Assembly: GCA_963924565.1 (NCBI GenBank) | Contig: OZ004608.1 | Location: 6,076,001-6,140,000, forward strand | Direction: 5' to 3' | DNA: 64,000 nt | DNA from: Ascidiella aspersa | Taxonomy: Eukaryota | Shown: positions 252 through 57,883 of the stretch, in pieces | How positions within the stretch are numbered: position 1 is the stretch's first letter | Layout: each line of letters begins with the position of its first letter | The notes under the pieces: generated by a model | What the model was told of the DNA's origin: nothing | The model's input: the letters and a program-made list of their open reading frames with translations, nothing else | The model's database searches: none | Position numbers and translations under genes: made by a program

Positions 252-2826
252 CTGATACAGAGGTGAATTCCAAAGTAGTTGGAGCCGCGGTGTTCGCTTT
301 GCCAATGGAGATAGAATCCACGGTGGTCGTTTGTATTGCGTTGGTTGTAAATGAAGTGAATGGTGAGGAAATGACAGGGTTTGTTTGTTTAACACTACTT
401 GTCGCTGCAACCTTATCTGAACAGAAAATGTTGAATGGCTTCACATAACCGCGACGCAACATTTGGACTGAGTTAGCAAAATATCGCGTTTATGGCTGCG
501 GTTTGAACAATAAGCTAATTTAGTTTTCAAACGGTATTTTCTATCGATATATGTCACGGGTTTATTACGTAAAATACTTTAGAAGTGCTTAGCGAAGGTT
601 GTGCGTTTAGTTGTTCCATTTAAGTAAAACACACAACGTTGAAATTTGATTTGATGTTAAACTCGACCTCATTTAACCGAAGTGGCACTTAGGAGTCGGA
701 TTTATGGCACCATTATGTCATTATACAACGCATGCTTCGTTTATTACCGACCTTTATAAACCTGTGTGAAACGACATTTTTTAAATTTAATCTAACTTTA
801 CTTTACCACTTCACAGTTTATTTAAATATTTAACTTTTGTTTCAAAAATATTTACCAATTTAATGTTTAGGTGTTGACTTGTTATAAGTTCATGTCCAAC
901 ATTTACATTATAATATTAAATCAACCAGTTAATGTAGTCATTTACTTATACTACAAATATCCAACACTTCTGATAATTTATGTTTTATATATATGAACTA
1001 TGCACTGATTAGCATGAGAGTAGAGCTATTCAGTTGCGTTTAAAAACCTTCAATGTTTGTTTGTGACCAGAAATTGTTTTTTTGTAACCGATTCCGCAGC
1101 CCTAATAAAAACAAATCACATGATTTTAAATTTCTATTATTGGCACGTAGTGTAAACGTTTAGACATAAATAAAATGTTATTCCATTTGAAATAATATTT
1201 TCGCATTATTTATGCTTCTGACGAACATCTTACGCTATCCACAATTACGTTTTGTTATATTTTGATTGCTGATTCATTTTCCATAATCATGGGCTATACT
1301 CGAGGCGTACAGTTTATCATGTTACAACGTTTTGCGCAATAGCTATGAAGAGCCCACAGCATGTTGGATTGTTTCTTTTGTTTAACCAGACAAAATTCAG
1401 CCATTCCAATATTTCATCTAGAAGTTTGTATAAGGCTCTATGCCTGTTCTAGCATTGTAAGCTGTTGTTCTTTATCCATTCGATATAATTTTTACTATGA
1501 CCCACAAAGCTATATAACATCTTAAACAGCTTTATTAAAATGAAGTTGTATAAAAAAGTTTGTTTAAGATCTATCTTAACTTTGTGTTTATTTTTGACCA
1601 AAGAGAGGCAAGCAGTTGAAAATCGATTGATATCTCCGGAAGTAAAATAACAATATCTACGAGAAACCTTCACACATTACTTCTGTGAGAATCTATTATG
1701 ACAACATCACATTACGAAGGATTGTCTTACTTGATACAGAGCTGGATTCCAAAGTAGTAGGATTCCTGGTGTTAGCTTTGGCAAAGGAGACAGAATTCAC
1801 GGTGGTCGTTTGTTTTGCGTTGGTTGTAACTGAAGTTAATGGTGAGGAAGTGACAGAGTTTGTTTGTTTAGCGCTGCTTGTTGCTGCAACCTTATCTAAA
1901 TAGAAAATGTTTAATGGCTTCACGCAAACGCGACGCAATTCCACGCGAATTTTATATGAAGTAAGTGTTCCCATTAGAGGCACAATGCAATTTTTAACAG
2001 TGCTTAATATTCATTAAAAAACTAACTCAACCACGAAAGTATAACGGCCATAATAGCCATACTAATTTTGCCAAAATGAAATTGATAAAAATATTGTATT
2101 TTTGTTTCCCAATTTTTATGCGACCATATAGACCGCATCGACTTGTTAACTTAGAACGTTTTCAAAGTGCAATTTATGCTGGTTAATCTGATAAATATAT
2201 TTTTTGGGATGAGCGCGAACCTATAACATCTTTGAAATAAAGAATCTTGACGTTTCAGTAGTACATGTTTTTGTACAACTGTGGGATCAATAAACCACAT
2301 AAATTATTTGCCTTATCTTTTCACTGTTGGTTCCGTAGGTTATGGTTTAATAAAAATAACGCTGACAAAATATTATTTTTACCGCCTGGTCTCTGACAAA
2401 TGTAGTTTTCCTTCCTGGTGCATAGTATGTCACTCCAAGAATAGTCCTTTTCACTTTTTTCCATCGCTGCACAATCCTCCAGCCATAATAAGTCATTCGG
2501 CTCTCCAGGTTTCCACTTAGTGTAATTTAACTGTGAGCCGTCAAGAAATTGTGGTTGTTTGCTCTTTTCAATCCTATATAATATGTGTTTATAGCTAAAA
2601 CTACTGGCGTAAAATCTCGCAGTTGCTTTGCTAATAATGTTTGTATCTTCGACGAGTTGACTTTTGCAAGAGTTCCATTTAATTTAACACACGCTGCTGA
2701 GGCTTGGTTGAAAGTTTTTTTGTTGATGCTGTCGATGTGGTATTCCAGGTTGCCCAATTGATGCCAAATAGCGAAAGCACTACCAAACAATGTTAAAACA
2801 ATTGTTGCAAAAAGAAGCGACTGCAT
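252..2826 (-). pseudogene. C-type lectin receptor A1 (EPN-type CTLD + mucin stalk), frameshifted; continues off the left edge
   Basis: Exons 2826-2383 (signal peptide MQSLLFATIVLTLFGSAFA; CTLD with YYIGL, WKPGEPN, EDC, WSD, YICQ), 1895-1731 and 416-252 (165-nt phase-1 Ser/Thr stalk exons with AG/GT sites). A 7-nt deletion near 2545 relative to paralog A3 (FEWLDG) shifts frame and gives TAA at 2527-2529. Confidence 0.8.
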
Positions 2827-3669
2827 CCTACAATATATGGCTGTGTTGTCTGTAAACCAAAATTCGTACGAAAATACTCTTTAAAGGCAACCTTATGACA
2901 ACGTCCAATGCTATACTTAGATATAGCCCTGATTCAAGGTAAACAGGAAACCCGCCTCTTACTATAACAACTGTGTGTGGAAATGTGACGCATTACGCTT
3001 GCTAACTATTCAGGAATTGTGTGGGACAGAGCCCTGACAAAATTGTTTGTTAAGCATTGTGAGTTTGAAACTATAGTTTTATTTATTTTAACAGGTTTTC
3101 GTAAAACCAATCATCGTTTGTTTAGTTTCGAATTTGTTACAAACAACGAACAAAATATAGATTTCATAAAGTTAAACACGGTAAATGTGCGTTACCATTC
3201 ATTTGTAAAAACATGCAAGAGTTAAACCCTAAAGTGGCAGCGTTTCCTATAGTTAAAGTTGCTTACCAATGGATTGCTGGCTCGCTTAATTTGTTCGCTT
3301 AAGAAAAATATTGTGCAATGTTCTAATAATCTAAAGTCTTATACCCATGTGGTTAAATTGGGTCAATGATCTGGCAAAACTTCCAGAGGGCAATATTGTC
3401 AGAGCCTTAAGCCTGGTGCAATTTTTTAGGGGTTAATTTTACAAATCCCTCTTTGCCCACCGCTGACAACCACACTGGTACTACTTTGTTGGCCCGCATG
3501 TCACTGTTTTCATCTTCTTGCAAAGAAAGCGTGTGGTTTGGTAAGATGTATTATAAAGTTTTCGTCATAATTTTTTAGTATAGTTAATTATATCTTTGTG
3601 CTGTTTTATTATTTCCGAACCATTAATGATCGTGGAAATGTGTATATGCCTCCTAATTAGCAAAGCACG

Positions 3670-6900: not shown

Positions 6901-6992
6901 ACGTCCAATATTGTTTATACCGAGAAATTAACATTGGGTTATTTTTCAAACTATTGTAAGGAGGCTTTCACTGGTATTGCAGTTGTTTGGGC

Positions 6993-9900
6993 TTATAGGT
7001 TAGATTGTTCTTGGGTCCTAAACTCGACGTATCCCGGGTCTCTTTCATCATTTTCCTGGACTGGAAACACTGGGTTGGGTTTCACGTAACCGCCTTCTTC
7101 TTCTTCGTCAGTACATTCTTCTGGACCTTAAAATACTATGGATTATCATGCAATTTGTTAAAAATTGATAAAGTATTTTTTTCTTAGGTTTTCTGTATAT
7201 ATTACAAACTTAATAACTTTGGTACATCACTGATTGTTGCTTAAACCTTTTCAGATTAAAGCATTTTCATTCTGCAAGGCGTATTAGAATTAAGGAGACA
7301 AGTCAAAATTTTAGACTATTAAAATAAAAAAAAATAAATTAGGCTTACTGTGAAATAGAAAACTTCTTAACCTGCTTAATTATCGCGTAACAATTCCTAG
7401 ATTTGTCGATATACTTTCGTTACATCTTTTATCAGTTGTTTTTATTATAAGTGTTGCATTCAGCGAAGTGTGAAATTTCAACAGCTATTCCCTTCGAGTT
7501 ATTCCTAGATTTATTTAACAGTATTTAAATAAGCTAACAAGCAAAGTTTCGCACATTTTAAGGAGTCACAAGAGGAGTTTGGGAATTTCCGGTGGTAGTT
7601 TGGACTGAAAATAGAAACATTTTTCACTCTAGAATCGCGTAATAATCCTCCATTTCTCGGTTCATTTCTTGGCATAGAATCTAGTCTATTCGACTGATTT
7701 CCTATCCGTTCATTTTGGTGCCAACACTAAAAGGAGGACTAGGCTTAGTGCACGCAGCATTACGTTTAAAATTGGTGTTAACGTAGACATGCTTTGTGTG
7801 AGATGTGCTTGCTATGGGAACTTCGTAGGCACTTTCCACAACCACTTCAGAATCTTTTTTTGGGCATCTAGAAATGTAGGGACTTTTAACTCTGGGTAAA
7901 TGGGTAACTATTGGTTTGTGTTAAAGAATAAAATACGGTGAATAAATACTGATATTAATTTTATTTACAATGTCACACAAACCTTTTCTTTATATGAAGT
8001 TCAAATTTTATGTTTTCGTTTTAATTTCAAAAATTAATAATTTCATGAGAATCATCGTAATGAATTTCTTTAAATACCCAAAACATGTTAAACATAATAA
8101 TCATAAAACTTTTCGGTCGGGCATACTCGCGCATTTTGACAAAAGTGAAAATCTAAACAGTTCTTTTGTTTATATTAAAACGTTGTCACCCATCTCGAGC
8201 AACATTTTTTATTCGGTTGTATGTCTTTACTTGCCTTTTCTGTTGACGTAGCTGAAAAATATTTATGCCAACGGATGCCAACAAGAGAAGAACAAGAACG
8301 ACTACTGCTATGGTGAGACCGTGGGCAGATTCCGTTTTAACAGGCCTGTGTTGAACTGTGAATAGAGCATTAGTTAAGTGTAGTTTTCTAGGTAAATTTT
8401 ATTTTCTACAACACACTTTGTTCTATAAGTAAAAAACGTCTTGAGTAGGGTATGACTAATTTTACCACATTTTATAGAGTACCGGTACACTAAGATATTC
8501 CTATTTTGCCAGCATTCTATCAGTATGGCTATTCCAAAACCGCTTTTTGCATATTGCGTTGCACTATTTTTGGTCGTGGCGCATTAATGTGTATTAGCGG
8601 CAACATGTTTATGTCCGTGCTCCGTAACCTTTTTTACTCACGATACACCAACAGAGCCTGAACAAATTCGGCGGGACACCTCCGAAATATTTGACGATCG
8701 ACAATAGACAACATAAGCAAATATATTTCTGGTTTTACGGGTTCTTCTGAAAATATCTTAAGACGGTTGAGGTGCTCAAATTGCACCCCGTGAAGTAGCG
8801 GATAGGAGAACATTGAAGGATTTCAACAGCATATTTCAAAATTGAAATCTGATAATAGGGTTTTGTACTTTTTTGCCTAATTTATTTTTTGGAAGATACT
8901 GTTTTTAACAATTATTTTTTTAAGATTATTTTTAACATTCACTGTAATATATTTACTTCATGGGTTTTAATAATTATCTTCCTTCAACTTAGGTGTAAAG
9001 TACACAATTACTGTATATTTATACTCCTGGTAGTTGTACGAGTTAAATAAACTATTTTAACGTTTAAATTTGACGATTGGACCTTACTTAGGTTTTAAAC
9101 GAGGTTGAAATATAAAGGAAAGTTGTTTTTTTTTTTGTCAAAAGTAGCCTGTAAACAAAAAGTAAAGCACATCGAGAAGCATCGTGACACACCTGACATG
9201 GTTTAGCGGCATAGCAGTTTGCCGCGGCACACCGGTTGCGGAGTATTGTTTCAGACGTTGCGTGGAAGTGCTTAAAGTTAATTAGTTTGGCTTCCTAAGG
9301 GCGCAGAACAAAAGCTAATACCACGTCTAAAAATAACTCCCTAATTTAAACGCGAAATTAGCGCACGTTGCAAAGTTTTAACCCACTCCTATCTGGTTGC
9401 AGGTTAATTTGACAAAACCGTAGCCCGACCCAATTGTTTGTGTTAGATTTCCGTGTTTAAGGTTTTCGCATTGTGAAAATTGATAGTTGATAAAATAATA
9501 ACGTTGTGGTTTTTATATTTTATATCAGGATTTGTGCTTGTTTAAAAAAATCTCAAACAACTTCATTCATACATAAGTGGTTTAAGATATGTTTTTACTT
9601 TGCTTATCTTTTTGGCTCGATTAATGAATATTTTTTACCAATTTAGAACTATGGCAAAATCACATGAGTCCGAATTGTCTTACCTGGTACGCAGGTGGAA
9701 ACCAAAGTAGTTGGAGCCGCGGTGTTAGCTTTGGCAGAGGAAGCGGAATCCACGTTGATCGTTTGTTTTGCGTTGGTTGTAACTGGAGTGGATGGCGAGG
9801 AAGTGACATGGTTTGTTTGTTTAGCGCTTTTTGACACTGTAACATAATCTGGACAGAAAATGTTGATTGGCTTTACGTTAACGCTGCGCAATTACACGCG

Positions 9901-11242
9901 AATTTTATTTAAAGCACGTTTAACTCGTTTTGTGGATCTGCTTCGTACAACTGTATTTTAAACAACGTTTCATGTTTATTAAACATAAACACAAGATCGA
10001 GAGTATAACAGTCCTATTATAGAATTACATATTTTGCCAAAAAGAACTACATGAAACTTCTACGTGATTTTGGAATGTCTTTTGTTGCCAAATTTTTACA
10101 TCACGCTACATGTCTTAACCAGATGTGGAAGTGAAATGTTTATTATGGCTTTACTTTAAGACTAAAATAACTTAACGCGAATCTTATATGGACTTAAATT
10201 AGTAACTCGCTTTGTTGTGGTCTGTTGGTTTGAATTTTTGCAATGCATGATAAATTTTACTGTTTTTATTAAATATGGCAAAACATCGCTTGTACAACGG
10301 CACTGTTTGAAATACACTGTTGGCCTACCTAAACTAGATAAACTCAAGTTCGACGAGTTTTTTAAAAGTAGTTTTGTTACACATTTACGTCGCGACAATA
10401 TAGCTATAGCGTCTCTTTTAACGCTTATAGTAAACTTTTACAAAATTACAATTTTTCTTGGTTAATCTAGTAATGACATGTTTTGCCCAGTATATATGGT
10501 TATAATGTTTTACGTAAAACTTATATAATTCAAAAAATTAGTAGAACACAACTTGATGAAGCTTTGCCGAATATTTTAAGGGCACCCTTAAACAGAAATC
10601 CTTTATCCTTGCCACATTTTTTTAGCTATTCTGATCCATTTAATTTCTTATATGATTTGTAGCATTTTTCAATTGAGCTGCCCGGTTTCTGTTTATTTGT
10701 TTTATTTACAAAACGAATAGGATATATTTACTCACCAATAGTTCTCTGGCAGATGTATCCGAATGTTGTTGTGCAAGGCATGTCATACCAGAGTAAATTG
10801 TCACTCCAGGAAATACCCATGGTGACGCAATTCTCGTTTCCATCGTGGTTGTCAGGTTGCTGCATTCCCCACGACGTATACATCAAAGCTGTTTCATCCA
10901 ACCATCGAAACTCACCACCACTTACATTCCGCTTCAAACCGATGTAAAACCCTTTCTTCGGAACTGTATACAAACGTTGGTTAACGCCACAAGTGATGTA
11001 AAACCACAAGCAAGTGGAAGGTTTTGTCACAAACCTGTAAAATTCGTCAGAAAATTCTGAATCCTTGAAGAGTTGACTTTTGCCAAAGTTGCGTTTAGAT
11101 TGCTACAAGCGGCAAGTGCTCCATTAAAATTTGTCAAATCGCTTGCAGCAATGTAGTATACCTTCCCGTTTAACTGGTGCCAAGTAACAGCTCTTGCTGC
11201 AGTCAGAAGATAACACGCAACTAGTAATGTAGCAATTCGCAT
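6993..11242 (-). CDS. C-type lectin receptor B1: QPD-type CTLD, mucin stalk, TM, Tyr-motif tail
   Basis: Exons 11242-11035 (signal + CTLD N-half), 10963-10736 (FYIGL..WGMQQPDN..ENC..WYDMPC..YICQ), 9848-9684 (stalk), 8355-8235 (TM LTIAVVVLVLLLLASVGINIF; GC donor), 7867-7764 (SAYEVP, VYVNT), 7126-6993 (DEEEEGGYVKP..DPGYVEF..stop). Phases match and the frame is open. The last splice (C|GTAATG) is the least certain. Confidence 0.8.
8615..9248. mobile_element. hAT-like MITE in intron 3 of B genes
   Basis: Imperfect 15-bp TIRs ccgtgctccgtaacc / ggttgcggagtattg. Intact copy also at 43208-43871; right end deleted in B2 (from 27819); split between 46965-47176 and ~55180-55314 in B4. Confidence 0.7.
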
Positions 11243-15974: not shown

Positions 15975-16262
15975 TTAGCATGATTGATCTGGCGACTTGA
16001 ACTCGACATAATCCCCGTGTTTTCCCTCATTTCCCTGGACCCGAAACACAGGGTTGAGATTCACGTAACCGCTTTCTTGGTATTCGTCATCAGAACATTC
16101 TTTTGTGACTTAAAATATTAGGATTAAATATGCAATTTGTTCAATCAAGACATTCTTGTTGTTATTTTAGGTTTCCACGGATAATGCAAACTTAACAATA
16201 CCAAATGGCAAAAGCACTACGAACTAATGTCAAACAACTGTCGCACTCAGAAGCCTATTCAT
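15975..16262 (-). pseudogene. Internally deleted lectin-receptor relic: decayed A-type signal-peptide start joined to an intact Tyr-motif terminal exon
   Basis: 16262-16201 aligns to the A-gene start (ATG..AGTGCTTTTGCCATTTGG) with a frameshift. 16108-15975 reads TKECSDDEYQESGYVNLNPVFRVQGNEGKHGDYVEFKSPDQSC*. Its upstream region resembles that of A1. Confidence 0.7.
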
Positions 16263-17691
16263 CCTACATGACTGTGTTGTAAACTAAAAGACTATAAACT
16301 GAATGAACACAATACTGCAACTCGCACCAATATAAGGTTTATAGCAACCTTATGATAACCTATAATACTGTAGTTACATTTATCTTATTGATTTAGAGCC
16401 ATAGCTTTTCCTTAAAGAAACCACCTCTTCAAACTGCTCGACGTTTGTGATGCATGACGCTTCACAAACACTCATGTGTGGGAGAGCGCCCTGACTGAAT
16501 TGTTTCACAAAAGAACAATATTTTTCAAGTATACCATTTTGTTTCATCTACCTGAACAATTCAATATTGCTCACTTACATACATTTGGATAAGTATTGCA
16601 TTAAATTGCCAAACAAGGTAGTTTAGTGTTTTTAGAGAAAGTTGGTTGTGTTACGCTTTCTTAAAACTGCAATATATGTCCAATATTTGAGTTAAGAGTT
16701 TAGCGAGATAACATTACAAACAATGATAAAACGATTCTAAAACAACACCAAGAACAGTTCATATTGGCTAACCGAGTGTGGAACTTTAAAAAAAGTTGAA
16801 TTCATGATTTATAGCAAATAATAAAAATGTGTTATAATTAAATAAAGTGGCGCTCCAGCAGCAAATTTTAGGATTTTCCCATATATTTTTTATTTGTCAG
16901 CATCACCATCTGTCATTTGACTGGAATTATAAGTTTAACTTTGACAACTTGAATACAATATTAAAATATTTAGTTTTATAATACACGATACAAGATGGAA
17001 TCAAAGAGTATTAGCAAGTTGTCAATATCCTAATCGGTTTCTCGGATTGTTGTTTGGTAATACTTAATAAAAAACAAACGTAAAACAGTGAAAACTTATC
17101 AAACTTAAAAGAGGACTTTTCACAGTTTAAACATTAAATTATCGAAATTTTATTTGTAGCGTTTTGTATTTCTTTCTCACATTAAATGTTTCGTGTTATT
17201 CTTCTATTTCTTTGCTGATTTCTATTATCTCACGCTTTGCCTAAAGGCGCCGAGCTTTTTTCTTCGGTGATTGTACACAAGTCTTGCAGTCTTGTGTTAA
17301 CTTGTCATTTCATCAGCATTTTAAAGTAAGCTGCAGCTTTTAGGTTTAACAGTAACTGTTTGTTTAGCAAAGATTATTATTCGTTTTGGTAAGAAGCTTT
17401 CATGAACTTCTACTCAAGGTCATAAACGTATATCATCAGATCCTAAGGTAAGTGTTTTTAAGTTCATATAGTTGGTTTGTAAACAATATTTTTTCCACCA
17501 TAGATCTTGTTTTTAGTTTAACTTTTTTTTTCTGCTATCTGAAGTTACAGCTAATATTCTTTGTGATATAAGCTTTTATATTGTTTCACATTGCAAAATA
17601 AAACCAAGACACATACACCTTACGAAAAAGTTGATTCAAAGGGATTTAAAGAAAATATAATTACCTAACAGAATGTTTTTCGACTCGCTCC

Positions 17692-17760: not shown

Positions 17761-17852
17761 TAGTCGTTTTTCTAGCCTGTCTTGGCTGTCTTGCTTGAGA
17801 TAGCTTACAACTACACAAAAGCAAGGTTCTTTAAATAATGGAGTATTTAGAC

Positions 17853-41615: not shown

Positions 41616-44600
41616 CTAGTTGTTAGATTGTTCTTGGGTCCTAAACTCGACGTATCCCGGATCTTTTTCCTCATTTTCCTGGACTGGAAACACTGGGTTG
41701 GGTTTCACGTAAACGCCTTCTTCTTCGTGAGTACATTCTTCTGGACCTTAAAATACTATGGATTATCATGCAATTTGTTAAAAATTGATAAAGTATTTTT
41801 TTCTTAGGTTTTCTGTATATATTACAAACTTAATAACTTTGGTACATCACTGACTGTTGCTTAAAACGTTTTCTGAATTAAAGCATTTTTATTCTGCAGC
41901 GGTATATGAGAATTAAGGAGACAAGTCATAATTTTAGACGATTAAAATAAAAAATAATTTAGGCTTACTGTTAAATAAACTTCTTGACCTGCTTAATTAT
42001 CGCGTAACAATTCCTAGATTTGTCGATATACTTTCGTTACATCTTTTATTAGTTTTTTTTATTATAAGTGTTGCATTCAGCGATGAGTGAAATTTCAACA
42101 GCTATTCACTTCGAATTATTCCCAGATTTATTTAACAGTTTTTAAATAATCTAACAAGCAAAGTTTCGCACATTTTAAGGAGTTTAGTCCAGAGAATACA
42201 AGAAGAGTTTGCGAATTTCCGGTGGTAGTTTAGATTGAAAATAGAAACAATTTTTTCAGTCTAGAATCGCTTAATATCTTCTCCATTTCTCGGTGTATTT
42301 CGTGGCATAGATTTTAGTCTAATCGACTCATTTCGTATCCGTTCATTTTGGTGCCAACACTAAAAGGAGGACTAGTTATAGTGCACGTAGCATTACGTTT
42401 AAAATTGGTGTTAACGTAGATATGTGATGTGCTTGCTATGGGAACTTCGTAGGCACTTTCCATCACCACTTCAGACTCCTTTTTAGGGAATCTAACAATT
42501 TAGGAAATTTTTAACTCTGGGTAAATGGTCAAGCTATTGATATTAATTACATTTACAATGTCACACAAATCTTTTGTTTATTTGAAGGGCAAATTAGGTT
42601 AATTTATGTCTTTTTACTTTAAAAAATAATAGTTTCATGAGCATCAGCTTATTGAATTTCTATAAATACCCAAAACATGTTAAACATAATAATCATAATA
42701 CGTTTCGGTTGGCCATCCTTGCGCTTATTGGCAAAAGTGAAAATCTAAACAGTTGTTTTGTTTATATTAAAACGTTGTCACCCATCTCGAGCAACAGTTT
42801 TTATTCGGTTGTATGTCTTTACTTGCCTTATCTGGTGACGTAGCTGAAAAATATTTATGCCAACGGATGCCAACAAGAGAAGAACAAGAACGACTACCGC
42901 TATGGTGAGACCGTGGGCAGATTCCGTTTTAACAGACCTGTTTTGAGCTATGAATAGAGCAATAGTTAAGTGTAGTTTTCTAGGTAAATTTTATTTTCTA
43001 CAACACCCTTTGTTCTATGAGTAAAAAACGTCTTGAGGAGGGTATGACTAATTTTACCACTTTTTATAGAATCCCGGTATACACTTATATATTCCCATTT
43101 TGCCAGCATTTTATCATTAATGCCATTTTTAAACCGCTTTTCGTGTATTGCGTCGCATTATTTTTGTCGTGGCGCATTAAAGTGTATTGGCGGCATCAAG
43201 TTTAGGTCCGTGCTCCGTAACCTTTTTTACTCACGATACACCAACAGAGCCTGAACAAATTCGGCGGCACACCTCCGAAATATTTGACGACCGACAATAG
43301 ACAACATAAGCAAATATATTTATGGTTTTACGGGTTCTTCTGAAAACATCTTTAGACGGTTGGGGTGCTCAAATTGCACCCCGTGAAGTAGTGGATAGGA
43401 GAAGATTGAAGGCTTTAAACAGCATATTTCAAAAATGAAATCCAATAATTGGGTTTTGTACTTTTTTGCCTAATTTATTTTTTTGGAAGATGCTGTTTTT
43501 AACAATACTTTTTTAAAGATTATTTTTAACAATCACTGTAATACATTAACTTCGGTTTTAAGCGTATGGATAATTATCTTCGTTCAAACTTTGGTATAAA
43601 GTACACATTTACTGTCTAATTATACTCCTGGTAGTTGTACGAGTTAAATAAACTATTTTAACGTTTAAATTTGGCAATTGAACCTTACTTAGGTTCTAAA
43701 CGAGGTTGAAATATAAAAAAGGAAAGTTGCACACCAAAAAAGGAAAGTTGCACGTCAAAAGTAGCATTTAAAAAAAAGAAAAAAGTAAAGCACATCGAGA
43801 AGCATCGCGACACACATGACATGGTATAGCGGCATAGCAGTTTGCCACGGCACACCGGTTGCGGAGTACTGTTTCAGACGTTGCGTGGAAGTGCTTAAAG
43901 TTAATTAGTTTGGCTTCCTCAGGGCGCAGAACAAAAACTGATACTACGTGTAAAAATAACTCCCTAATTTAAACGCGAAATTAGCGCACGTTGCAAAGTT
44001 TTAACCCACTCGTATTTGGTTGCCGGTATATTTGACAAAACCGTAGCCCGACCCAATAGTTTGTGTTAGTTTTTCGGGTTTCTGGTTTTCGCATTGTGAA
44101 AATTGATAGTTGATGAAATCATAACGTTATGGTTTTTATATTTTATATTAGGATTTGTGCTTGATTAAGAAAGTCTCAAACAACTTTATTCATATGTAAG
44201 TGGTTTAAGATATGTTTTTACTTTGCTTCTCTTTTTGGCTCGATTAATGAATATTTTTTATCAAATGTAAAACCATTGCAAAATCACATGAGTCAGCACC
44301 AACTTACCTGATACAGTGGTGGAAGTGGTTGGAGCCGCGGTGTTAGCTTTGGCAGTAGAAGCGGAATTCACGGTGGTCGTTTGTATTGCTTTGGTTGAAA
44401 CTGAAGTAAACGGTGAAGAAGAGACAGAGTTGGTTTGAATTTTTGCAATGCATGATAAAAAAATTAGTTTTGTTACACATTTTCGTCGCGACAATATATG
44501 TATAGCGCCTTTTTAACGCCTATAGTGAAGTTTTACAAAATTGCAATTTTTCTTGCTTAAACTAGTTATTTTAATTTTTGCACAGTATATTCGGTTATAA

Positions 44601-45610
44601 TGTTTTAAGTAAAGCTTACTAATTCAAAAATTTAGCTGGACGCAACTTGGTGCCGTTTCCCCGAAGATTTTAAGGGAACCTTTAAACAGAAATCATTTAT
44701 CCTTGTCACATTATTTAGCTATAACATTCGATTTATTTTTTTGTATTCGATTTGTAGCATTTTTCAATTGAGCTGTCCGGTTTCTGTTTATTTCTATTAT
44801 TTACAAAACCAATAGGATGTTTTTACATACCAATGGTTCTCTGGCATATGCACCCGAGTGCTGTGGTGGCGCGAGGAATGCCATACCACAGTAAATTGTC
44901 AGGATATACCCATAGTGACGTAACTCTTACCAACAACATTATTTCATCCGTTGTCAGGTTGCCCATGTCCCCAGGACGTATTTTACACTGACCAGTTCTA
45001 CTTTAAACCAGCATAGCAAATTTGGAATTTTGATAATAAAAGCGAAATATATTAAGTCAAACCGTTTCGTGTTTAATATGTTATCTTTGTTATATTTTAC
45101 TCACCAATAGTTCTTTGACAAATGTACCCGAAAGTTCTGCCGCAAGAAATGTCATTCCACAATAAACTGGTACTCCAACTAGTCCCCATTGTGACGCACT
45201 CCTCTATTCCTCCATGGTTGTCAGGTTGGTATTTCCCCATGACGTATACACCAAAGCTGTTCAATCCATCCATCGAAACTCACCATCATTTGCATTCCGC
45301 TTCAAACCGATGTAAAATCCCTTGTTTGGAACTGGAAACATACGTTGGTTAACGCCACAAGTGATGTAAAACTACAAGCAATTGAAAGGTTTTTGCACGA
45401 ACCTGTAAAATTTGTCAGAAAATTCTGAATCGTTGAAGAGTTGACTTTTGCTAAAGTCGCGTTTAGATTTCTACAAGCGGCACTTGCTCCATCAAAATTT
45501 GTCGAAACGCTCACAGCAATGTAGTATTCCTTCCCGCTTAACTGGTGCCAAGTAACAGCTGTTGTTGCTGTCAGAAGATAACACGCAACTAGTAATGAAG
45601 CGATTCGCAT
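41616..45610 (-). pseudogene. C-type lectin receptor B3 pseudogene
   Basis: Exon 1 45610-45403 is open. Exon 2 45331-45105 has TGA at 45263-45261 plus a 1-nt deletion before QPD. A second decayed CTLD half-exon lies at ~44980-44831. The stalk exon (~44435-44308) lost its acceptor by deletion. TM 42947-42827 and tail exons 42491-42397 and 41746-41616 remain open. Confidence 0.8.
43208..43871. mobile_element. hAT-like MITE (paralog of 8615-9248)
   Basis: TIRs ccgtgctccgtaacc / ggttgcggagtactg. Confidence 0.7.
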
Positions 45611-48049: not shown

Positions 48050-48445
48050 AATGGCTCCGGCTTCAGCCCCGGAGTCATAAAACTCAATCCTTTGGCTCCG
48101 GCTCCAGCTCCGGAGCCATCAAACACAGACCCAATGACTCCGGCTCCAGTTCCGGTGCCACCAGTCACTTATTCAATGGCAAGTTTTAAAAATTGCTTTT
48201 GGCTAATTAACGTTGGAGATGGGACAAATTATAATTTCTTAGCTTTAGCACCACAAATTGAAAAATGGCTCCAGCTCCGGCTCCAGCTCCGGCTCCAGCT
48301 CCACAAAAATAATAAAAAAGGCTCCGGCTCCTGCTCCAGCTCCAGCTCCAAAAAAATAATAACAATGGCTCCGGCTCCGGCTCCGGCTCTGGCTCCAGAG
48401 AAAATGCTTAGATCTGGGCTCCGGGGTTCCGGCTCCCCAGTCCTG
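48050..48445 (-). mobile_element. Terminal fragments of the GGAGCC-repeat hAT family
   Basis: 48170-48445 is the reverse-complement homolog of 62583-62830 (terminus CAGGACTGGGGAGCC). A further GGCTCC array lies at 48050-48170. Confidence 0.75.
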
Positions 48446-48488
48446 GTTGAAGGCACCTTTACGTAAAATAGCCAGTTGCTATATTTAC

Positions 48489-51332: not shown

Positions 51333-51416
51333 ATCTGGAGCTAAATGCCGGCAAACTAAACAAGTGGGTAGCACTGAACAGAAAACAACCTCCGAGCAGT
51401 TGTTTTTGGATGATTC

Positions 51417-54400
51417 CTAAGTACGTGAAGTTTGTTGGGTTAGGTTTTGGTCGCTTGAAGTTTCCTGGCCTGAAACGCCAGAAGTTTTGCCCACGCATGA
51501 TATCTTCTTGCGAATGACGTCATTCTTGACACAGTAGCAATAGAACACCGCCAATCCCTGAAGCCCGTTCACCAGCGTGTGGATGTACGTCATCACTTCT
51601 GACGTCATCTCGTCGCCGAGACCTGGAGCAAAAATAGCTTCAATTATGTGGTAAATTTATTAGAAGATAAACGGCTTGCAGTGCCTGAAACTAAATACAA
51701 TTCTAAAGCAATTTCATCCAAATTTTAGCATTTTGGGAATATTGTCATCCTTATTACAAACGTAGCTTTGTTTAGGTTTGCCACAAAGCCATTCATTTTC
51801 TTTAAATTGCATTTCATTCTTAAAATCCTAAAAATCACTATATTTTTCTAAAATGTTTTGATTTTATGTGCAGCTTAAATAATTTGTTTAGAAAGTGCTG
51901 TGAGATAGACAATTTTTTTATTTTTTTTTGTATTGCGTTTCGCCTGACATTTATTCTGTTTTCATTTATAATTATCTTCAAAAGACGCCAAGTGATTATA
52001 TTGTAGGTCTTCAAAAACCGATCAATTTCCTTTGAAAAGTATTATACTGTCTTTGAATTTATTCATGAAAATACGAAACAACCCTGGTTCCCATTGACAA
52101 ATTTTACCTGTAAAAAATCCAAGAACCCACGTTGTTCCAAGAACCAACATCAAGAAAAAGAAGGCCTTGAAAAAGGTCTTCGCGTCTTGATCCACTTCCT
52201 CCGGATTTCTCCGCTTCTTGTTCTTCCTGGAGGAAAGGAGCACCCACGATCCGATGAGAGCAGAGAGGAAGTTGACCAGCAGACAAATCGCGATCGGCAC
52301 GACCACAGTGAGAATGAACACGTTGGTGCCAGGATCCAACCAGCATCTATCGAATTTGCTTCCCCCTTGTTGTGTAACGTTAATGTCCTTGACCTTGATG
52401 TAGTTTCCTGTTGGAAGACCAGCGGCGAGCGCCGATCCGACCACAAGTGCCGGGATGAACCATCCCACCACCAAGAACACCTTTAATCGCTTTTGAGAGT
52501 CTTGTACCTGAAATCCAATCGGGTTCGTCATGGCCATTGTCATTCGGATTCCGTCGATCGTAAACCAGCAACCTAAAAAAAACAAAATAAGGCTCAGCTA
52601 AGCTAAAAATGGAAAAGATGAAACACCGAATTTAAATTAGAAACAACATAGGCCATAAAGATTGATTAAGAACCAAAACTGTTCATAATACAAAAGGAAA
52701 AAACAACAACAAACGTTCTGTAGGTGTCCTTAATGTATTAAATTAACGAATGTAAACAGAACTAAACTATAGTAATCTCAATATTGCAATTAAGATAATA
52801 AATAGACAACAAATTGCTGAAAATTAGACGGTTATAAAAAAAACTCAAGATAATTTACCTTCAAGATATTCAATAGAAAACAAATAGTTGAAAACTAAAC
52901 ACTTTAAATTAAGAAAATATGAATAAAATAGGCATCACAAGTTAAAAGGTGAATGAATGTAGTTGGAACAGAAACATCTATGTCATGAGGTTAAACCGAC
53001 AGAATTTTCCAGGATTCAAACTTTCCAAAAAAGGACGGAGAAAGAGAAAAACGTGCAAATATTTATTTCCCAATTAGTTGTCACCTGACGCAATCAAGAA
53101 GTAGTGGATGCTGGCAGAGAGGAAGACACATCCGACTTGATGAAGGATTGCTGCATCCTGGAGGAGATTGGAGACGTGGAGGAGGAGGAGGGAGAAGACG
53201 ACGCAGAGCTGGATCAGGGTCCGGTCGCTGGCGATCTGCCGCTTGTGACGTAACAGCAGCGCGATGCTGAGCACGAGGAAGCAAACTGAGATCGACTCGC
53301 AAACGTACGAGGTGACCTAAAAATAAATGCACTATTTTTAAAACAACGGAGAAAAAATAAACTAAATATTATAATAATAGTCTTAGGGAAAAATTTGTGC
53401 TATAGCGTGAAATAATGTAATGTCTTTTGATAGTATAATAATATTAAAATATGGGTTTTAATTTGACGCAGCATTAGAATTACTTCAACATTTAAAGATA
53501 TAATTTATCGCTTTCAAAGTTTTTTCAATTTCGAGTTTTTTCTATCATGTCTGCCATTTACTTTTTTAAGTTTTCTGATTTTTGAATTTGCTTTATTTTG
53601 ATTTTTTGCAACTGTGTTTTGTTTTGTTAAAGTGCTGTCTTAACTATTTGAGGTAACGTTCTGATTAATTAAATCGTTTTCGAAACCGGTTGAATTTTTC
53701 AAAAGTAAGGCATTCCTGTATGACAAGAAAGTGTGTTTAAAAGTTGATTGAGTAAATTAACTAAAAAAGTTTTGTTTGGGGATTTGGCAATTTAGCATTA
53801 AATGTTTAGGGTTATCTTTATATAATTTACAAAAAGAATAAAATTTGGTTGTTTCAGTTAATTCTTAGGAATTTCGTTGCTCCTAAACAAATCACCCTAA
53901 TAAAAGGTTTAGTGTGAAATCACATGAGAGATATGTCTTTCTCTGTTTGTTTTTATATTGAATTTTTGTTCCAATACATTATATTATAATTTGTCAATCT
54001 CTTACTTTAACTCCAAGTGAAATGGCTCTAGTTTTCATTGAGAGCAGAATAGAAAACACGGTGAGGTGATCACATTCGCAGTGGACACGGTCGCCTATCA
54101 ATTTGCTACGGCATCCAGCTGTTGAATAAGCCGACGATCTGTCGATGAAACTGCAAGCATACTCCACTTTCTGCAAGCTAAGCTTTGCCGACGATATTAC
54201 ATTGTTTTGGCAAACCCCGCGGGATGTCTGTTCGGCGTTTGTAACTTGCCGCGAAAATGCGACGGAGCCCTTTAGGCTGGCACCAGTTTTGGCCTTGTAG
54301 CCTGACACGCTGGTGAAAACCTTGGGGCTTAGTTCAGCATAACGTTTACTGGAATCTTGCTGACCGCTATTGACAAAAGCGCATGATGTTAAATTGGTTT

Positions 54401-54700
54401 TAAAGACAACTTCAAATATTATGATAGCCCCTGATAAATTGCCGGCGATCTGGAAGGTAGCATTTACCGAGGATTTCTCAAAATCGACCAACCCTGACTC
54501 GATTGTTCCGCCGCTTGACGTTACAAGTTTCACCACAACTTGTACGCTGACTTCTGTGAGGTTGTATTGTAATGAATAGTTGCCTTTCGGAAGTTGCCTC
54601 AGGTTGTTGTTTTCCAATGTGTTAAGTTTTTGTAAAGAAACAATATCATCACCGTCAGACGCCGTTGTGTTGACCAGCTTCCTTATTTCACGATCGATTG
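51417..54700 (-). CDS. Adhesion GPCR module: GAIN/GPS + 7TM
   Basis: Exons 54700-54006 (ends CSFI..YSTAGC..CECDHL/TVFSILL, GPS with intact HL/T site), 53316-53085 (TM1-3, HYFLIAS), 52572-52108 (CWF..GWFIP..CWL..LGTTWVLG), 51622-51417 (NGLQG..stop). Phases 1/0/1/1 are consistent. No start codon or signal peptide of its own. Confidence 0.9.
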
Positions 54701-55626
54701 CTACAACCAAATATTATTATTTTATTATTCGAAAACTAATCATACAGCTTACAAGGCATTATTTCGCATTAAATAGGTGCAAATCTTATGTTGAAGTTTT
54801 GTTTGTGCGAAATTATAAAAAGATAACATTACAAATAGGATACCATGATTTTAAACAAAACGTGCAACTGCTTCCTCGACCTAACTTCTTAAATATTAAC
54901 AAAACGAACATTTCTATATTATTTGGCTTGTCGGTCTGATATTATATACGTTCATATAGCAAGAGAGGGACTGGGCTATACGTTGCGCACGTTTTGTACA
55001 CATTTCTCACTCTTAAGCGAGAAACTGCTCATTACGCCAGAATAGAAAGAAGTCATGTGCTCCCAGACAGAAAAAACTGGTCTCTTTCTATGAGAGAAAA
55101 ACGGAGTAATGAGAGCGCGTCTCAAGCGAGCGTCTCTTATACATGGTAATAGCAATTTGTTTAGGTTGTAAACAATACACAGGAAAGTTGTTTTTGTCAA
55201 AGGTAACCATTCAATAAAAGAAAAACAGTAAAGTACATCAAAAAGCATCGCGTTACACCTGACATGGTTTAGCGCCATAGCAGTTTGCCGCGGCACACCG
55301 GTTGCGGATTACTGTTTTAGACGTTGCGTCCTATCTGGCTGCCGGTATAGTTGACATACCATACCCCGACCCAATTGTTTGTGTTAGTTTTCTGGGTTTC
55401 AGGTTTGCGCATTGTGACAATTAATAGTTGATTGAAATAATAACGTTATGGTTTTAATTATTTATCGTAGGATATGTGCATGTTTAAAAAAATTCCTAAA
55501 CAACTTTATTCGTATATAAGTGGTTTGTTATATGTTTTTACTTTGCGTATCTTTTTGGCTCGATTAATGTATATTTTTTTCCAATGTAAAACTATGGCAA
55601 AATCACATGAGTCAGAACCAACTTAC

Positions 55627-57883
55627 CGGATACAGTGGTGACAGTGTTGGAAGTAGTTGGAGCCGTGGTGTTAGTTTTGGCAAAGGAAACAAAATCCACG
55701 GTGGTCGTTTGTTTTGTGTTGGTTGTAACTGAAGTGAATGATCGGGAAGAGACAGAGCTGGTTTGCATCGCAATACTTGTCTTACCCAGATCTGGAAGTG
55801 AAATGTTCACTAGGGCTTCACTTTAACACTAAAGCAACTTAACGCGAAAGCGAATCGTATATGCAACTAAATAAGTTTAACTCGTTTTGGGGTGGTCTGT
55901 TGGCTTTAATTTTTGGAATGCATGATAAGGTTTACTGTTTTTATTAAATATGGCAAAACATCCCTAGTATAACGGCCCTATTTGAAGTACAATGTTGGCA
56001 TACTTAAACTAGATAAACTCAAGTTCGACGCGTATTTTAAAAGTAGTTTTGTTACATATTTTCTACGCCACAATATAGCTATAGCGTCTCTCTTAGCGCT
56101 TATAGTGAATTTTTACCAAATTGCAAATTTTCCTGGTTAATCAAGTTATTATATTTTTTGCACAGTATATATGGTTATAGTGTTTTAAGTAAACCACGCA
56201 ACTTGGTGACGTTTCTCCAAAAAAATGTAAGGACACCCTTAAACAGAAATCCCTGATGCGTCTAAAATAACTCCCTAATTTAAACGCGAAATTAACGCAC
56301 GTTTCAAAGTTTTAACCCACTCCAATATGGTTGCCGGTTTATGTGACAAAACCGTAGCCCGATCCAATTGTTGCGTTGGTTGTCTGAGTTTTAGGTGAAT
56401 TGTTAAAATTGATAGTTGATTAAAACAATAACATATTGTTTTTTATATTTATATTGGAGTGTGTGCATGTTTAAAATAATCTCAAACAACTTTATTCATA
56501 TATAAGTGTTTTAAGATATGTTTTTACTTTGCTTCTCTTTTTGGTTCGATTAATGAATATTTTTTTACCAATGTAAAACCATTGCAAAATCTCATGAGTC
56601 AGAACTAACTTACCTGATACAGTGGAAGTAGTTGGAGCCACGGTGTTAGCTTTGGCAGATGAAGCGGAATTCACGGTGGTCGTTTGTGTTGCGTTGGTTG
56701 TAACTGAAGTGAATAGCGAGGAAGTGACAGAGCTCGTTTGCACAATACATTTCTCAACAAGGCCTGGAAGCGAATGTTTATTAGGTCTTCACTTTAACAC
56801 TAAAGAAACTTAACGCGAATCTTATATGGAACTAAATTAGTTTAAATCGCTATTTTGGGGTGATCTGTTGGCTTGAATTTTTGCAATGCACGACAAGGTT
56901 TACTGTTTTTATTAAATATGGCAAAACATCGCTTGAATAACGGCCCTATTTGAAGTACAATATTGGCCTACCTAAACAGATAAACTATAAGTTCGACGCG
57001 TTTTTTGAAAGTAGTTTTGTTACACATTTTTGTCGTGACAATATAGCTATAGCGTCTCTTTTAACCCTTTTACAATTTTTCTTAGTTAATCTAGTTATTA
57101 TATTTTTTGCACTGTATATATGGTTATAGTGTTTTAAGTAAAAGTTATAGAAAATTAAAAAAAATAGCATGACGCAACTTGGTTACGTTTGTCCGAAAAT
57201 TTTAAAGTCACCCTTAAACAGAAATGCCTAATCCTTGCCACATAATTTTAGCTATTCTGATCTATGATTTGTAGCTAAATGATTTGTAGCATTTTTCAAT
57301 TGAGATGTCCGGTTTGTGTTTATTTGTTTTATTTAAAAAACCAATAGAATATATTCACTTACCAATGGTTCTCTGGCATATGTACCCGAAGTTTGTGGTG
57401 GAGCAAGGAATGTCATACCACAGTGAATTGGTACTCCAGGAAATACCCATAGTGACGCAATTCTCATGAACACCAGTATTTCCTCCGTTGTCAGGTTGCT
57501 GTATTCCCCATGACGTATACATCAAACCTGTTCCATCCAACCATCGGAACTCACCACCATTTGCATTCCGCTTCAAACCGATGTAAAATCCCTTGTTTGG
57601 AACTGGAAACATGCGTTGGGTAAGGCCATAAGTGATGTAAAACTACAACTATAAGTGGAAGATTTTGTCACAAACCTGTATATTTGGTCAGAAATTTCTG
57701 AATCGTTGAAGAGTTGACTTTTGCCAAAGTCGCGTTCAGCTTACAACAAGCCGCACTTGCTCCATTAAAATTTGTCGAATCGTTCACAGCAATATAGTAT
57801 TCCTTCCCGTTTAACTGGTGCCAAGTAACAGCTGTTGTTGCAGTCAGAAGATAACACGCAACTAGTAATGAAGTGATTCGCAT
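55627..57883 (-). CDS. Lectin head B4 (signal, QPD CTLD, two mucin stalk exons); probable N-terminus of the adhesion GPCR
   Basis: Exons 57883-57676, 57602-57363 (QQPDNGGNTGVHENC..WYDIPC), 56763-56614 and 55791-55627, all open. The last donor G|GTAAGT is phase 1. No TM exon follows before 54700. Confidence 0.8.

What the first reader, a model, noticed from the sequence alone, without database searches (positions are those of the whole stretch)
252..57883. Cluster of alternating EPN/QPD type-I lectin receptors with immunoreceptor-like tails
Seen: order A1-B1-(relic)-A2-B2-A3-B3-B4, all minus strand. A heads carry EPN and B heads QPD. Tails hold 4 or more tyrosines in ITIM (VEYSTV), ITAM-like, YxN and YxxP contexts. 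All ectodomain introns are phase 1. Known: EPN usually confers mannose/GlcNAc/fucose preference and QPD galactose/GalNAc preference. Vertebrate signalling CLRs such as Dectin-1 and CD94/NKG2 are type II, whereas these have a signal peptide and a C-terminal tail. Inference: an independently evolved, birth-and-death innate recognition complex with swappable heads, stalks and tails, duplicated as A+B pairs.
Basis: partly seen in the sequence, partly recalled or inferred. Interest (0 to 1): 0.85.

Follow-up and report, generated by a model that had tools for sequence, protein, structure and literature searches.

The report
Sea-squirt membrane lectin receptor gene array
The window is a 64-kb slice of a roughly half-megabase tandem array of sea-squirt genes for membrane-anchored C-type-lectin receptors with tyrosine-motif tails. 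Only three of the seven lectin heads here sit on intact genes of that kind, and no expression or function has been shown.

Summary
The core observation holds. Seven C-type-lectin heads lie on the minus strand in the stated order, with EPN in A1-A3 and QPD in B1-B4, plus a relic between B1 and A2.

Complete GT-AG models with an open frame could be built for A3, B1 and B2. Each has a signal peptide, a two-exon lectin domain, a Ser/Thr-rich stalk, one membrane span and a tail with 5-7 tyrosines. All ectodomain introns are phase 1.

- **Broken copies.** A1, A2 and B3 carry frameshifts, a stop or lost splice sites.
- **B4.** It has no type-I anchor or tail. It reads in frame into a GAIN/GPS-7TM adhesion GPCR.
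- **Sugar site.** The WND partner of EPN/QPD is WVD or WYD in every intact head, so the sugar-preference inference is weak.
- **Tail motifs.** The ITIM alone is within chance (P 0.11-0.17). The ITAM-like pair is not (P 0.005), but it is lost in A3.
- **Selection.** The B-head scaffold and the B-tail core are under purifying selection, while the binding loops vary freely.

About 32 heads lie in the 280 kb examined, and tail exons span C2:5.87-6.35 Mb. The scan has already reported this family on neighbouring DNA of the same genome.

The parts
252..2826 (-). A1, a broken gene. The EPN head is at 2826-2390. Intron 1's donor was removed by a 58-nt deletion, and a 7-nt deletion shifts the frame between the GLKR and LDG codons. 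Two B-type stalk exons lie at about 1895-1731 and 416-252. The membrane, tail and acidic exons lie before the window start (C2:6075570-6075397, 6074799-6074635, 6074197-6074069).
6993..11242 (-). B1, an intact six-exon type-I QPD/WYD receptor of 334 aa. Exons: 11242-11035, 10963-10736, 9848-9684, 8355-8190, 7867-7764, 7126-6993.
   Evidence: (open frame, all GT-AG)
15978..16505 (-). Relic of an A'-type unit: an A-type 5' region and start of exon 1 (16198-16505, 70% to A2/A3), next to an open acidic terminal exon (16106-15978).
19478..22963 (-). A2, a broken gene. Exons: 22963-22744; 22673-22460 (frameshifting deletion in the lectin exon); 22398-22285 (acceptor AG changed to TG); 20483-20366 (membrane span); 20296-20244; 19770-19478 (open tail with YELP, YSTL-x11-YSHL and VEYSTV).
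26213..30303 (-). B2, an intact six-exon type-I QPD/WYD receptor of 335 aa. Exons: 30303-30096, 30024-29785, 28914-28753, 27566-27401, 27080-26977, 26340-26213.
34447..38210 (-). A3, the only intact EPN gene here (EPN/WVD). Exons: 38210-37991, 37920-37699, 37637-37524, 35727-35610 (membrane span), 35540-35488, 35013-34721 (339 aa). An alternative donor at 34750 joins in frame to the acidic exon 34577-34447 (373 aa). A dispersed repeat sits in intron 3 (36080-36813).
41616..45610 (-). B3, a broken gene. Exon 2 (45331-45105) has an in-frame TGA and a 1-nt deletion. It is the only copy with QPD plus WND. The downstream stalk, membrane, tail and acidic exons are still recognisable (44440-44308, 42947-42782, 42491-42397, 41746-41616). 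A degenerate extra copy of exon 2 lies at 44979-44857.
51420..57883 (-). B4, a QPD/WYD lectin head on an adhesion GPCR. Exons 57883-57676, 57602-57363, stalks 56763-56614 and 55791-55627, and GAIN/GPS exon 54700-54006 form one open 486-aa frame. 7TM ORFs follow at 53316-53077, 52597-52025 and 51656-51420. There is no type-I membrane or tail exon.

Best explanation
The window holds part of a lineage-specific, fast-turning-over tandem family of type-I membrane receptors.

**Build of an intact gene.** It encodes a cleavable signal peptide, one short-form C-type-lectin-like domain split over two exons, a Ser/Thr-rich stalk that is probably O-glycosylated, one membrane span and a cytoplasmic tail of about 95-150 residues with no enzyme domain but several tyrosine motifs.

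**Shown here**
- The exon models and their reading frames.
- Recurrence of the same exon order in about 30 units.
- Purifying selection on the B-head scaffold and on the B-tail core.
- Much faster change in the loops around QPD.
- Exon-level re-pairing of heads, stalks and tails.
- Frequent gene death.

**Inferred mechanism**
- The variable loops bind diverse ligands. These may be glycans, but the Ca2+/sugar site is non-canonical.
- Clustering of the receptor leads to phosphorylation of tail tyrosines by a Src-type kinase. SH2 or PTB adaptors then dock and drive uptake (endocytosis or phagocytosis) and/or cell activation.
- This would resemble the type-I engulfment receptor Draper/CED-1 (ITAM plus NPxY), or the endocytic type-I lectins CD302 and the mannose-receptor family.

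**In this window.** A3, B1 and B2 are candidate working genes. A1, A2, B3 and the relic are dead copies. B4 is the sensor end of a lectin-headed adhesion GPCR.
For: - **Heads.** Motifs and strand come, and Lectin_C over two exons.
- **Models.** Open GT-AG models were built for B2, A3, B1 and B4 up to the GPS exon.
- **Topology.** Hydrophobic signal and membrane segments are followed by basic residues.
- **Exon order.** tblastn of the exon peptides on 280 kb gave 240 hits, all on the minus strand and always ordered head, stalk, membrane, tail, acidic exon.
- **Splice sites.** They are kept across diverged types. The E5 acceptor AG is present in 14 of 15 copies, and the E6 acceptor in nearly all. 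A1 and B share the phase-2 junction between the membrane exon and the tail exon.
- **Selection.** For B-head exon 2, dN/dS is 0.40 overall, 0.25 in the scaffold and 0.84 in the loops around QPD. Only 2 of 300 random column sets reach the loop value. The B-tail core has dN/dS 0.35.
- **Tail motifs.** The ITAM-like pair in the A tail has P = 0.005 against shuffles and is present in 7 of 8 A tails. VEYSTV is present in 8 of 8.
- **Acidic cassette.** There are 39 copies of the acidic YV(K/N)PNPVF...GYVEF exon in the genome, and 38 are open.
- **Paralogy.** Copies are 74-94% identical within the window, and A3 has two further copies at 98%. These are paralogues, not two haplotypes.
- **Precedents.** Draper has an ITAM with x6-12 spacing plus NPxY (PMC6219719). 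Tunicates have ITIM/ITAM signalling proteins and paired tyrosine-motif receptor genes (PMC12582321).
Against: - No transcript evidence exists.
- The tails have no homologue outside this genome.
- The A tail (dN/dS 0.66), the membrane exon (0.87) and the acidic exon (0.78) are only weakly constrained.
- Tyrosine columns are not specially conserved in the A tail.
- The Asn of WND, a Ca2+ and sugar ligand in canonical lectins, is missing in all intact in-window heads.
- About 11 of 17 EPN-lineage heads in the 280 kb are broken.
- The full lectin domain could not be folded or searched as one piece, because joined models may not be submitted.
Confidence: 0.62

Rival explanations
1. One reading: an NK-complex-like paired system. 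A-type receptors deliver inhibitory (ITIM to SHP phosphatase) or activating (ITAM to Syk) signals. B-type receptors recruit Grb2/Crk-type adaptors. EPN and QPD heads read mannose-type and galactose-type glycans, and the cell integrates the two signals.
For: - VEYSTV is invariant in 8 of 8 A tails, and YSTL-x11-YSHL is present in 7 of 8, beyond chance.
- The two head lineages alternate along the array.
- Botryllus uses tandem gene pairs with ITIM or hemITAM tails and has the downstream signalling proteins (PMC12582321).
Against: - The one intact A gene in the window (A3) has lost the ITAM-like pair, and most EPN heads in the array are broken.
- B tails have no ITIM or ITAM.
- No membrane span carries a charged residue for adaptor pairing.
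- A single ITIM is expected by chance in 11-17% of such tails.
- The WND partner is non-canonical, so EPN/QPD need not set sugar preference.
- There are no expression data.
Confidence: 0.2
2. Pure cargo or clearance receptors. The tails act only as sorting signals (YxxPhi for AP-2, NPxF for PTB adaptors, an acidic cluster). The receptors take up glycoconjugates or microbes without signalling, as the asialoglycoprotein and mannose receptors and CD302 do.
For: - The nearest solved lectin domains belong to the type-I endocytic mannose-receptor family (FcRY, MRC1, DEC-205, PLA2R; E 1e-10 to 1e-14).
- The cassette shared across tail classes is an acidic run, then YV(K/N)PNPVF, then GYVEF near the C-terminus. 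That reads as NPxF plus YxxPhi.
- YSTL, YSHL and YSTV are also YxxPhi.
Against: - The matches to the mannose-receptor family are generic lectin-domain similarity.
- The dual YxxL pair with 11-residue spacing and the YVN and YxxP motifs are better known as SH2 docking sites.
- The acidic exon as a whole is weakly constrained (dN/dS 0.78).
Confidence: 0.13
3. The array is mostly genomic debris or an assembly artefact. On this view the units are decaying duplicates or uncollapsed haplotypes, and few or none make protein.
For: - Three of seven heads in the window are broken, as are about 12 of the 28 heads scored for intactness among about 32 in the 280 kb.
- Several exon classes have dN/dS of 0.66-0.87.
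- Read depth could not be checked.
Against: - Ten of 11 B heads are open.
- The B-head scaffold (dN/dS 0.25) and the tail core (0.35) show purifying selection, and splice sites are conserved.
- Units differ by 6-26% with many indels.
- The most similar copies of A3 occur in three places at 98%. That cannot be two haplotypes of a diploid.
Confidence: 0.05

Closest known systems
CD302/BIMLEC (CTLD group XV) and layilin/chondrolectin (group VIII): vertebrate type-I single-CTLD membrane proteins
   Same: The order of parts is the same: signal peptide, one C-type-lectin-like domain, a short spacer, one membrane span and a cytoplasmic tail without an enzyme domain. Type-I orientation is described for Bimlec in PMC514892.
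   Different: - No specific sequence relationship was shown.
- The vertebrate proteins are single-copy genes, not a tandem array of dozens.
- The vertebrate lectin domains lack EPN/QPD (my own knowledge), whereas these keep EPN or QPD.
- The tails are unrelated.
Mannose-receptor family (MRC1, DEC-205/LY75, PLA2R, Endo180, FcRY)
   Same: These give the best matches among solved structures for both head types. They are type I and endocytic, with tyrosine-based and acidic tail signals (my own knowledge).
   Different: Those proteins have 8-10 lectin domains plus ricin-like and fibronectin-II domains. The proteins here have a single lectin domain on a mucin-like stalk.
Natural-killer gene complex and Dectin clusters of mammals (type-II C-type-lectin-like receptors with ITIM, hemITAM or adaptor pairing)
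   Same: Both are tandem multigene clusters of lectin-fold receptors with tyrosine signalling motifs, rapid birth and death, and many pseudogenes.
   Different: - The membrane orientation is opposite: type I here, type II there.
- There is no charged membrane residue for adaptor pairing.
- The motifs sit in long C-terminal tails.
- There is no evidence of common descent.
Draper/CED-1/MEGF10/Jedi engulfment receptors
   Same: They are type-I receptors whose enzyme-free tails combine an ITAM of the form YxxI/L-x6-12-YxxI/L, an NPxY-type PTB site and many other tyrosines (PMC6219719). The A tail has YSTL-x11-YSHL, and the B and A' tails have NPVF.
   Different: - The ectodomain there is made of EGF/EMI repeats, not a lectin domain.
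- Here the ITAM-like pair and the NPxF sit on different tail classes.
- NPxF has Phe where the known motif has Tyr.
Botryllus Fester / Fester-coreceptor clusters
   Same: They come from the same subphylum. They are tandem, copy-number-variable gene pairs whose tails carry ITIM, hemITAM and other tyrosine motifs that swap between copies (PMC12582321).
   Different: Those receptors are immunoglobulin-superfamily proteins. These have lectin-domain heads. No link to allorecognition is shown here.

Membership tests
C-type lectin-like domain (Pfam PF00059) | A match to the family profile over its whole length | tested here: met
   Exon 1 matches profile positions 2-36 and exon 2 matches 38/39-107, in both A3 and B2. 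Exon 2 scores above the cut-off on its own (35-40 bits). Exon 1 alone scores 21-22 bits against a cut-off of 22.6.
C-type lectin-like domain (Pfam PF00059) | Four conserved cysteines (two disulfides) and the WIGL-type strand | tested here: met
   The A3, B1 and B2 models have Cys in helix 1, in the E-x-C motif, before the last strand and in the final I-C-Q motif. YIGL stands in the WIGL position. Pairing of the cysteines is inferred, not shown.
Ca2+-dependent carbohydrate-recognition domain (canonical C-type lectin) | EPN or QPD tripeptide plus the following Glu (E-x-C) | tested here: met
   EPN is present in A1-A3 and QPD in B1-B4. The Glu two residues before the Cys is present in all.
Ca2+-dependent carbohydrate-recognition domain (canonical C-type lectin) | WND motif, whose Asn and Asp complete Ca2+ site 2 and bind the sugar | tested here: not met
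   A3 has WVD, A1 has WSD, and B1, B2 and B4 have WYD. Only the broken B3 has WND. Canonical EPN+WND heads do exist elsewhere in the array, for example at C2:6033079 and 5997073.
Ca2+-dependent carbohydrate-recognition domain (canonical C-type lectin) | Measured Ca2+-dependent sugar binding | not testable with these tools
   This needs recombinant ectodomains on glycan arrays with and without EDTA.
ITIM-bearing inhibitory receptors | [S/I/V/L]xYxx[I/V/L] in the cytoplasmic tail | tested here: met
   VEYSTV is in A2, A3 and all 8 A tails in the 280 kb examined. It is absent from B tails. The chance of at least one such motif in a shuffled tail is 0.11-0.17.
ITIM-bearing inhibitory receptors | Phosphorylation and recruitment of an SH2 phosphatase | not testable with these tools
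ITAM-bearing activating receptors | YxxL/I - x6-12 - YxxL/I | tested here: inconclusive
   The pair is present in the broken A2 and in 7 of 8 A tails (P = 0.005 against shuffles). It is lost in A3 (Tyr to Asn) and absent from B tails. The spacing is 11, outside the strict 6-8 but inside the 6-12 definition used for Draper.
NK-complex / Dectin-type C-type-lectin receptors (CTLD groups II and V) | Type-II orientation: N-terminal cytoplasmic tail, no signal peptide | tested here: not met
   The models start with a hydrophobic signal sequence and end with a membrane span plus tail.
Adhesion GPCR (applies to B4 only) | A GPS/GAIN region followed by a secretin-type 7TM domain, joined to the N-terminal adhesion domain | tested here: met
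   GPS scores E 6.8e-7 and 7tm_2 scores E 4.9e-17. The lectin head, two stalk exons and the GAIN exon form one open 486-aa frame with GT-AG phase-1 junctions. The same arrangement occurs three times on C2. Transcript joining is not testable here.

The most novel reading that the evidence does not exclude
A non-vertebrate chordate has built, from type-I lectin-domain genes, a counterpart of the vertebrate NK/myeloid lectin-receptor complexes. It would consist of dozens of tandem receptors whose hypervariable binding loops sit on interchangeable inhibitory-type, activating-type and adaptor-docking tails, and in three copies on a GPCR. One head repertoire would thus be wired to several signalling outputs by exon shuffling through phase-1 introns. 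The array would serve self/non-self or microbe discrimination.
Probability: 0.2. Interest if true: 0.85.

Novelty: new variant of a known kind. Interest (0 to 1): 0.5.

Why it matters
If these genes are expressed, they would show that lectin-fold recognition receptors with their own tyrosine-signalling tails expanded into a large, fast-evolving array in the sister group of vertebrates. The array is built in the opposite membrane orientation from mammalian NK and myeloid lectin receptors.

That would give a tractable case of convergent evolution of an immune-type receptor complex. It would also show exon shuffling that re-pairs sensors with outputs, including a GPCR output.

The hypervariable position next to QPD and the non-canonical WYD/WVD site are concrete targets for asking what such heads bind.

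As it stands, this is a careful gene-model description without expression or functional data. The same family has already been noted several times in this scan.

Tried and rejected
- **Tail homologues.** The A2 tail exon was searched against 1.84 billion representatives and gave two weak hits. P0001 is a Laminin_G_3 repeat protein and P0002 a fasciclin repeat protein. Both are chance matches.
- **ESM Atlas.** The tail has no convincing look-alike (score 0.84). The head matches Lectin_C/perlucin-like clusters.
- **Pfam on tails.** Nothing was found.
- **The search for homologous proteins.** I did not use it. Single exons of 40-100 aa can only retrieve proteins of 0.55-1.75 times that length, so full-length relatives are out of reach.
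- **Joined models.** Hence there is no structure prediction of the whole lectin domain and no exact-sequence look-up of the models.
- **First model of the B tail exon.** The acceptor at 27122 was rejected. Stops recur just downstream of it in several paralogues. B1 needs the acceptor 'tttctag' at 27080/7867, which is shared with A1 and conserved in 14 of 15 copies.
- **Cryptic acceptors for A1 and A2.** I considered acceptors that would rescue them. They would delete the YIGL strand and lack a pyrimidine tract, so I rejected them.
- **Rest of the array.** Copies beyond C2:6.14 Mb are known only from hit tables.
- **A'-type membrane-to-tail junction.** It could not be made frame-consistent and is left unresolved. 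No intact A' gene lies in the window.
- **Literature.** Five full-text searches. The four aimed at this family found no description of it; one search was for the Draper precedent.

Full report
**Setting.** The window is G000:C2:6076001-6140000 of a 308.6-Mb, 75-contig assembly. Earlier notes of this scan take it for a sea squirt. GC content is about 35% throughout.

**Checking the observation.** A six-frame motif scan finds EPN in lectin context at about 2503, 22580 and 37822. It finds QPD at about 10859, 29920, 45228 and 57498. All are on the minus strand, so the stated order A1-B1-A2-B2-A3-B3-B4 is correct.
- Pfam places Lectin_C positions 2-36 on a first exon, which also carries the signal peptide, and positions 38-107 on a second exon, for both A3 and B2.
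- Self-comparison shows the units are 74-94% identical with many indels. A2/A3 are 94% identical over 6.8 kb, and B1/B2 are 90-92% identical.
- The relic between B1 and A2 is a remnant of an A-type 5' end (16198-16505) next to an open acidic terminal exon (16106-15978).

**Gene models.** I built models from the sequence, requiring GT-AG and a continuous frame.
- B2: six exons, 30303 to 26213, 335 aa.
- B1: six exons, 11242 to 6993, 334 aa.
- A3: six exons, 38210 to 34721, 339 aa.
- Each model has a hydrophobic N-terminal signal, a lectin domain with four cysteines and YIGL, a Ser/Thr-rich stalk exon, and a hydrophobic span of 19-22 residues followed by basic residues. That is type-I topology.
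- Every ectodomain intron is phase 1. The intron after the membrane exon is phase 2, and the one before the last exon is phase 1.
- My first acceptor for the B tail exon was wrong. Stops recur just after it in several paralogues, and B1 is open only with the acceptor 'tttctag'. That acceptor is homologous to A1's and is kept as AG in 14 of 15 copies.
- A3 also has a GTAAGA donor at 34750 that would join in frame to an acidic exon at 34577-34447, giving 373 aa. Only transcripts can show whether it is used.
Exons were searched one at a time, by reference.

**Broken copies.**
- A1 lacks 58 nt that include the intron-1 donor. It reads through the remnant and then has a 7-nt deletion that shifts the frame before EPN. 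Its membrane, tail and acidic exons lie 0.4-1.9 kb before the window start and are of the B kind.
- A2 has a frameshifting deletion in the same exon, a 5-nt gap between the GLKR and WxD codons. Its exon-3 acceptor has changed from cag to ctg.
- B3 has an in-frame TGA and a 1-nt deletion in exon 2.
- These indels of 5, 7 and 58 nt are unlikely to be sequencing slips.

**B4.** It has intact head exons and two stalk exons, but no type-I membrane or tail exon follows. Instead, the second stalk exon's phase-1 donor matches a phase-1 acceptor of an exon carrying a GPS motif. 7tm_2 ORFs follow. Start codon to the end of the GAIN exon is one open 486-aa frame.
- The same head-plus-GPCR arrangement occurs three times on C2, with 97-100% identical GPCR parts.
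- Related GPCRs lie on C8 and C6.
- B4 is therefore the sensor end of a lectin-headed adhesion GPCR, as another note on this window proposed.

**The wider array.** I assembled C2:5.86-6.14 Mb from fetched pieces and mapped the exon peptides onto it. All 240 hits are on the minus strand. About 32 heads recur, always in the order head, stalk, membrane, (juxtamembrane), tail, acidic exon.
- There are three tail classes. The long A tail occurs in 8 copies here and about 11 close copies in the genome. The B tail plus acidic exon is the second class. An A' variant is the third.
- Heads, stalks and tails are re-paired. A1 is an A head on B stalks and a B-like tail. A' is an EPN/WND head on a B-type stalk. 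B4 is a B head on a GPCR.
- The repeat unit looks like A + A' + B rather than A + B.
- Ten of 11 B heads are open, but only about 6 of 17 EPN-lineage heads are.
- The acidic exon has 39 copies, 38 of them open, almost all between 5.87 and 6.35 Mb.
- B-type heads also fill clusters at 2.4-2.8, 6.74-6.90 and 7.0-7.4 Mb of the same chromosome.
- A3 has two further copies at 98%, 73 and 150 kb away. Three such copies cannot be two haplotypes.

**Are the exons under selection?**
- For ten intact B heads, exon 2 has dN/dS 0.40. Split a priori, the scaffold gives 0.25 and the loops around QPD and before WYD give 0.84. Only 2 of 300 random column sets reach the loop value.
- The residue just before QPD has nine states in ten copies.
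- The B-tail core (SAYEVP to HVYVN) has dN/dS 0.35.
- The A tail (0.66), the membrane exon (0.87) and the acidic exon (0.78) are only weakly constrained.
- The heads and at least one tail exon therefore behave as coding sequence. The evidence for the A tail is thin.

**Sugar site.** EPN or QPD and the Glu of E-x-C are present. The Asn of WND, a Ca2+ and sugar ligand in canonical C-type lectins (my own knowledge of mannose-binding protein), is Val in A3, Ser in A1 and Tyr in B1, B2 and B4. Only the dead B3 has QPD plus WND. The mannose-versus-galactose reading is therefore a lead, not a result. The closest solved domains are generic: the mannose-receptor family, collectin CL-P1, aggrecan, CD23 and Mincle.

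**Tails.** A2 has six tyrosines, A3 five (seven with the acidic exon), B2 six and B1 five.
- Against 4000 shuffles of each tail, one ITIM is unremarkable (P 0.11-0.17).
- The YSTL-x11-YSHL pair is unusual (P 0.005), and three YxxPhi motifs in A2 give P 0.026.
- Across eight A tails, VEYSTV, YELP and YSTL are invariant, but three of seven tyrosine columns vary against 23 of 80 other columns. A3 has lost the second ITAM tyrosine.
- YGQN and TYNRI are not YxN. True YxN motifs are YVN (B) and YDN (A3).
- The cassette shared across tail classes is an acidic run, then YV(K/N)PNPVF, then GYVEF. This reads as NPxF plus YxxPhi and fits PTB-adaptor or endocytic signals as well as SH2 docking.
- Draper shows that a type-I engulfment receptor can combine an x6-12 ITAM with NPxY (PMC6219719).
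- Botryllus shows that tunicates use tandem receptor pairs with ITIM or hemITAM tails and have the downstream machinery (PMC12582321).
- The tails have no homologue outside this genome.

**What could not be done.** The divergence pattern argues strongly against the haplotype explanation. Four full-text searches aimed at this family found no description of it.

**Verdict.**
- The window holds three plausible working receptors (A3, B1, B2), three dead ones plus a relic, and one lectin-headed GPCR.
- The immune, paired-receptor and sugar-specificity readings are untested inferences.
- Other windows of this scan have already reported the same family: s1-790843, s1-790865, s1-805286 and s1-801568.

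Noticed in passing
window 36080-36813 (intron 3 of A3), with the same element in A2 intron 3 at about 20950-21350: A dispersed repeat has more than 25 copies at 74-80% identity on many chromosomes. It explains the long spurious ORFs at 36266-36553 and 20950-21321.
   Followed up: partly
window 60363-60967, minus strand: Two ORFs match the protein-kinase domain (Pkinase E 4e-16 and 2e-8). The block duplicated upstream of B1, B2 and B4 (11616-13725 = 30677-32817 = 58357-60359) stops exactly at this gene's edge.
   Followed up: no
window 51420-54700, plus C2:6020494-6023784 and about C2:6195736: The GAIN-7TM gene behind B4 exists in three copies at 97-100% amino-acid identity, each 2.4-2.7 kb behind a B-type lectin head. 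The heads are only about 80-85% alike. Relatives at 60-85% identity form clusters on C8 (22.7-25.3 Mb) and C6 (6.75-6.93 Mb).
   Followed up: partly
C2:6183231-6187102 and C2:6260077-6263949: Two further copies of the whole A3 gene are 98% identical at the nucleotide level and include the adjacent acidic exon. This indicates a recent higher-order repeat of about 75 kb.
   Followed up: partly
B-head exon 2, e.g. window 29920-29935, 10859-10875, 57498-57515: The residue just before QPD takes nine different states in ten intact B heads. The loop after QPD carries 9- and 12-nt indels. B1 and B2 are 99% identical in exon 1 but only 92% in exon 2.
   Followed up: partly
window 48178-48448 and 62580-62826: An inverted pair of about 270 nt (78% identity) gives Ala-Pro-rich and Gly-Ala-rich ORFs on both strands. 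It is probably a mobile or low-complexity element.
   Followed up: no
L005 3245-4243 and 1-630 (C2:6072245-6073243 and C2:6069001-6069630): A tandem satellite-like repeat with a period of about 150 nt lies just downstream of A1's last exon and is open in several frames.
   Followed up: no
window 44857-44979: A degenerate second copy of lectin exon 2, with stops, lies behind B3's exon 2.
   Followed up: no
C2:6033371-6029140 and C2:5997373-5996864 (L022-L023, L019): A'-type units carry canonical EPN plus WND heads on B-type stalks. Their junction between the membrane exon and the tail exon could not be made frame-consistent with the model used for B genes.
   Followed up: partly
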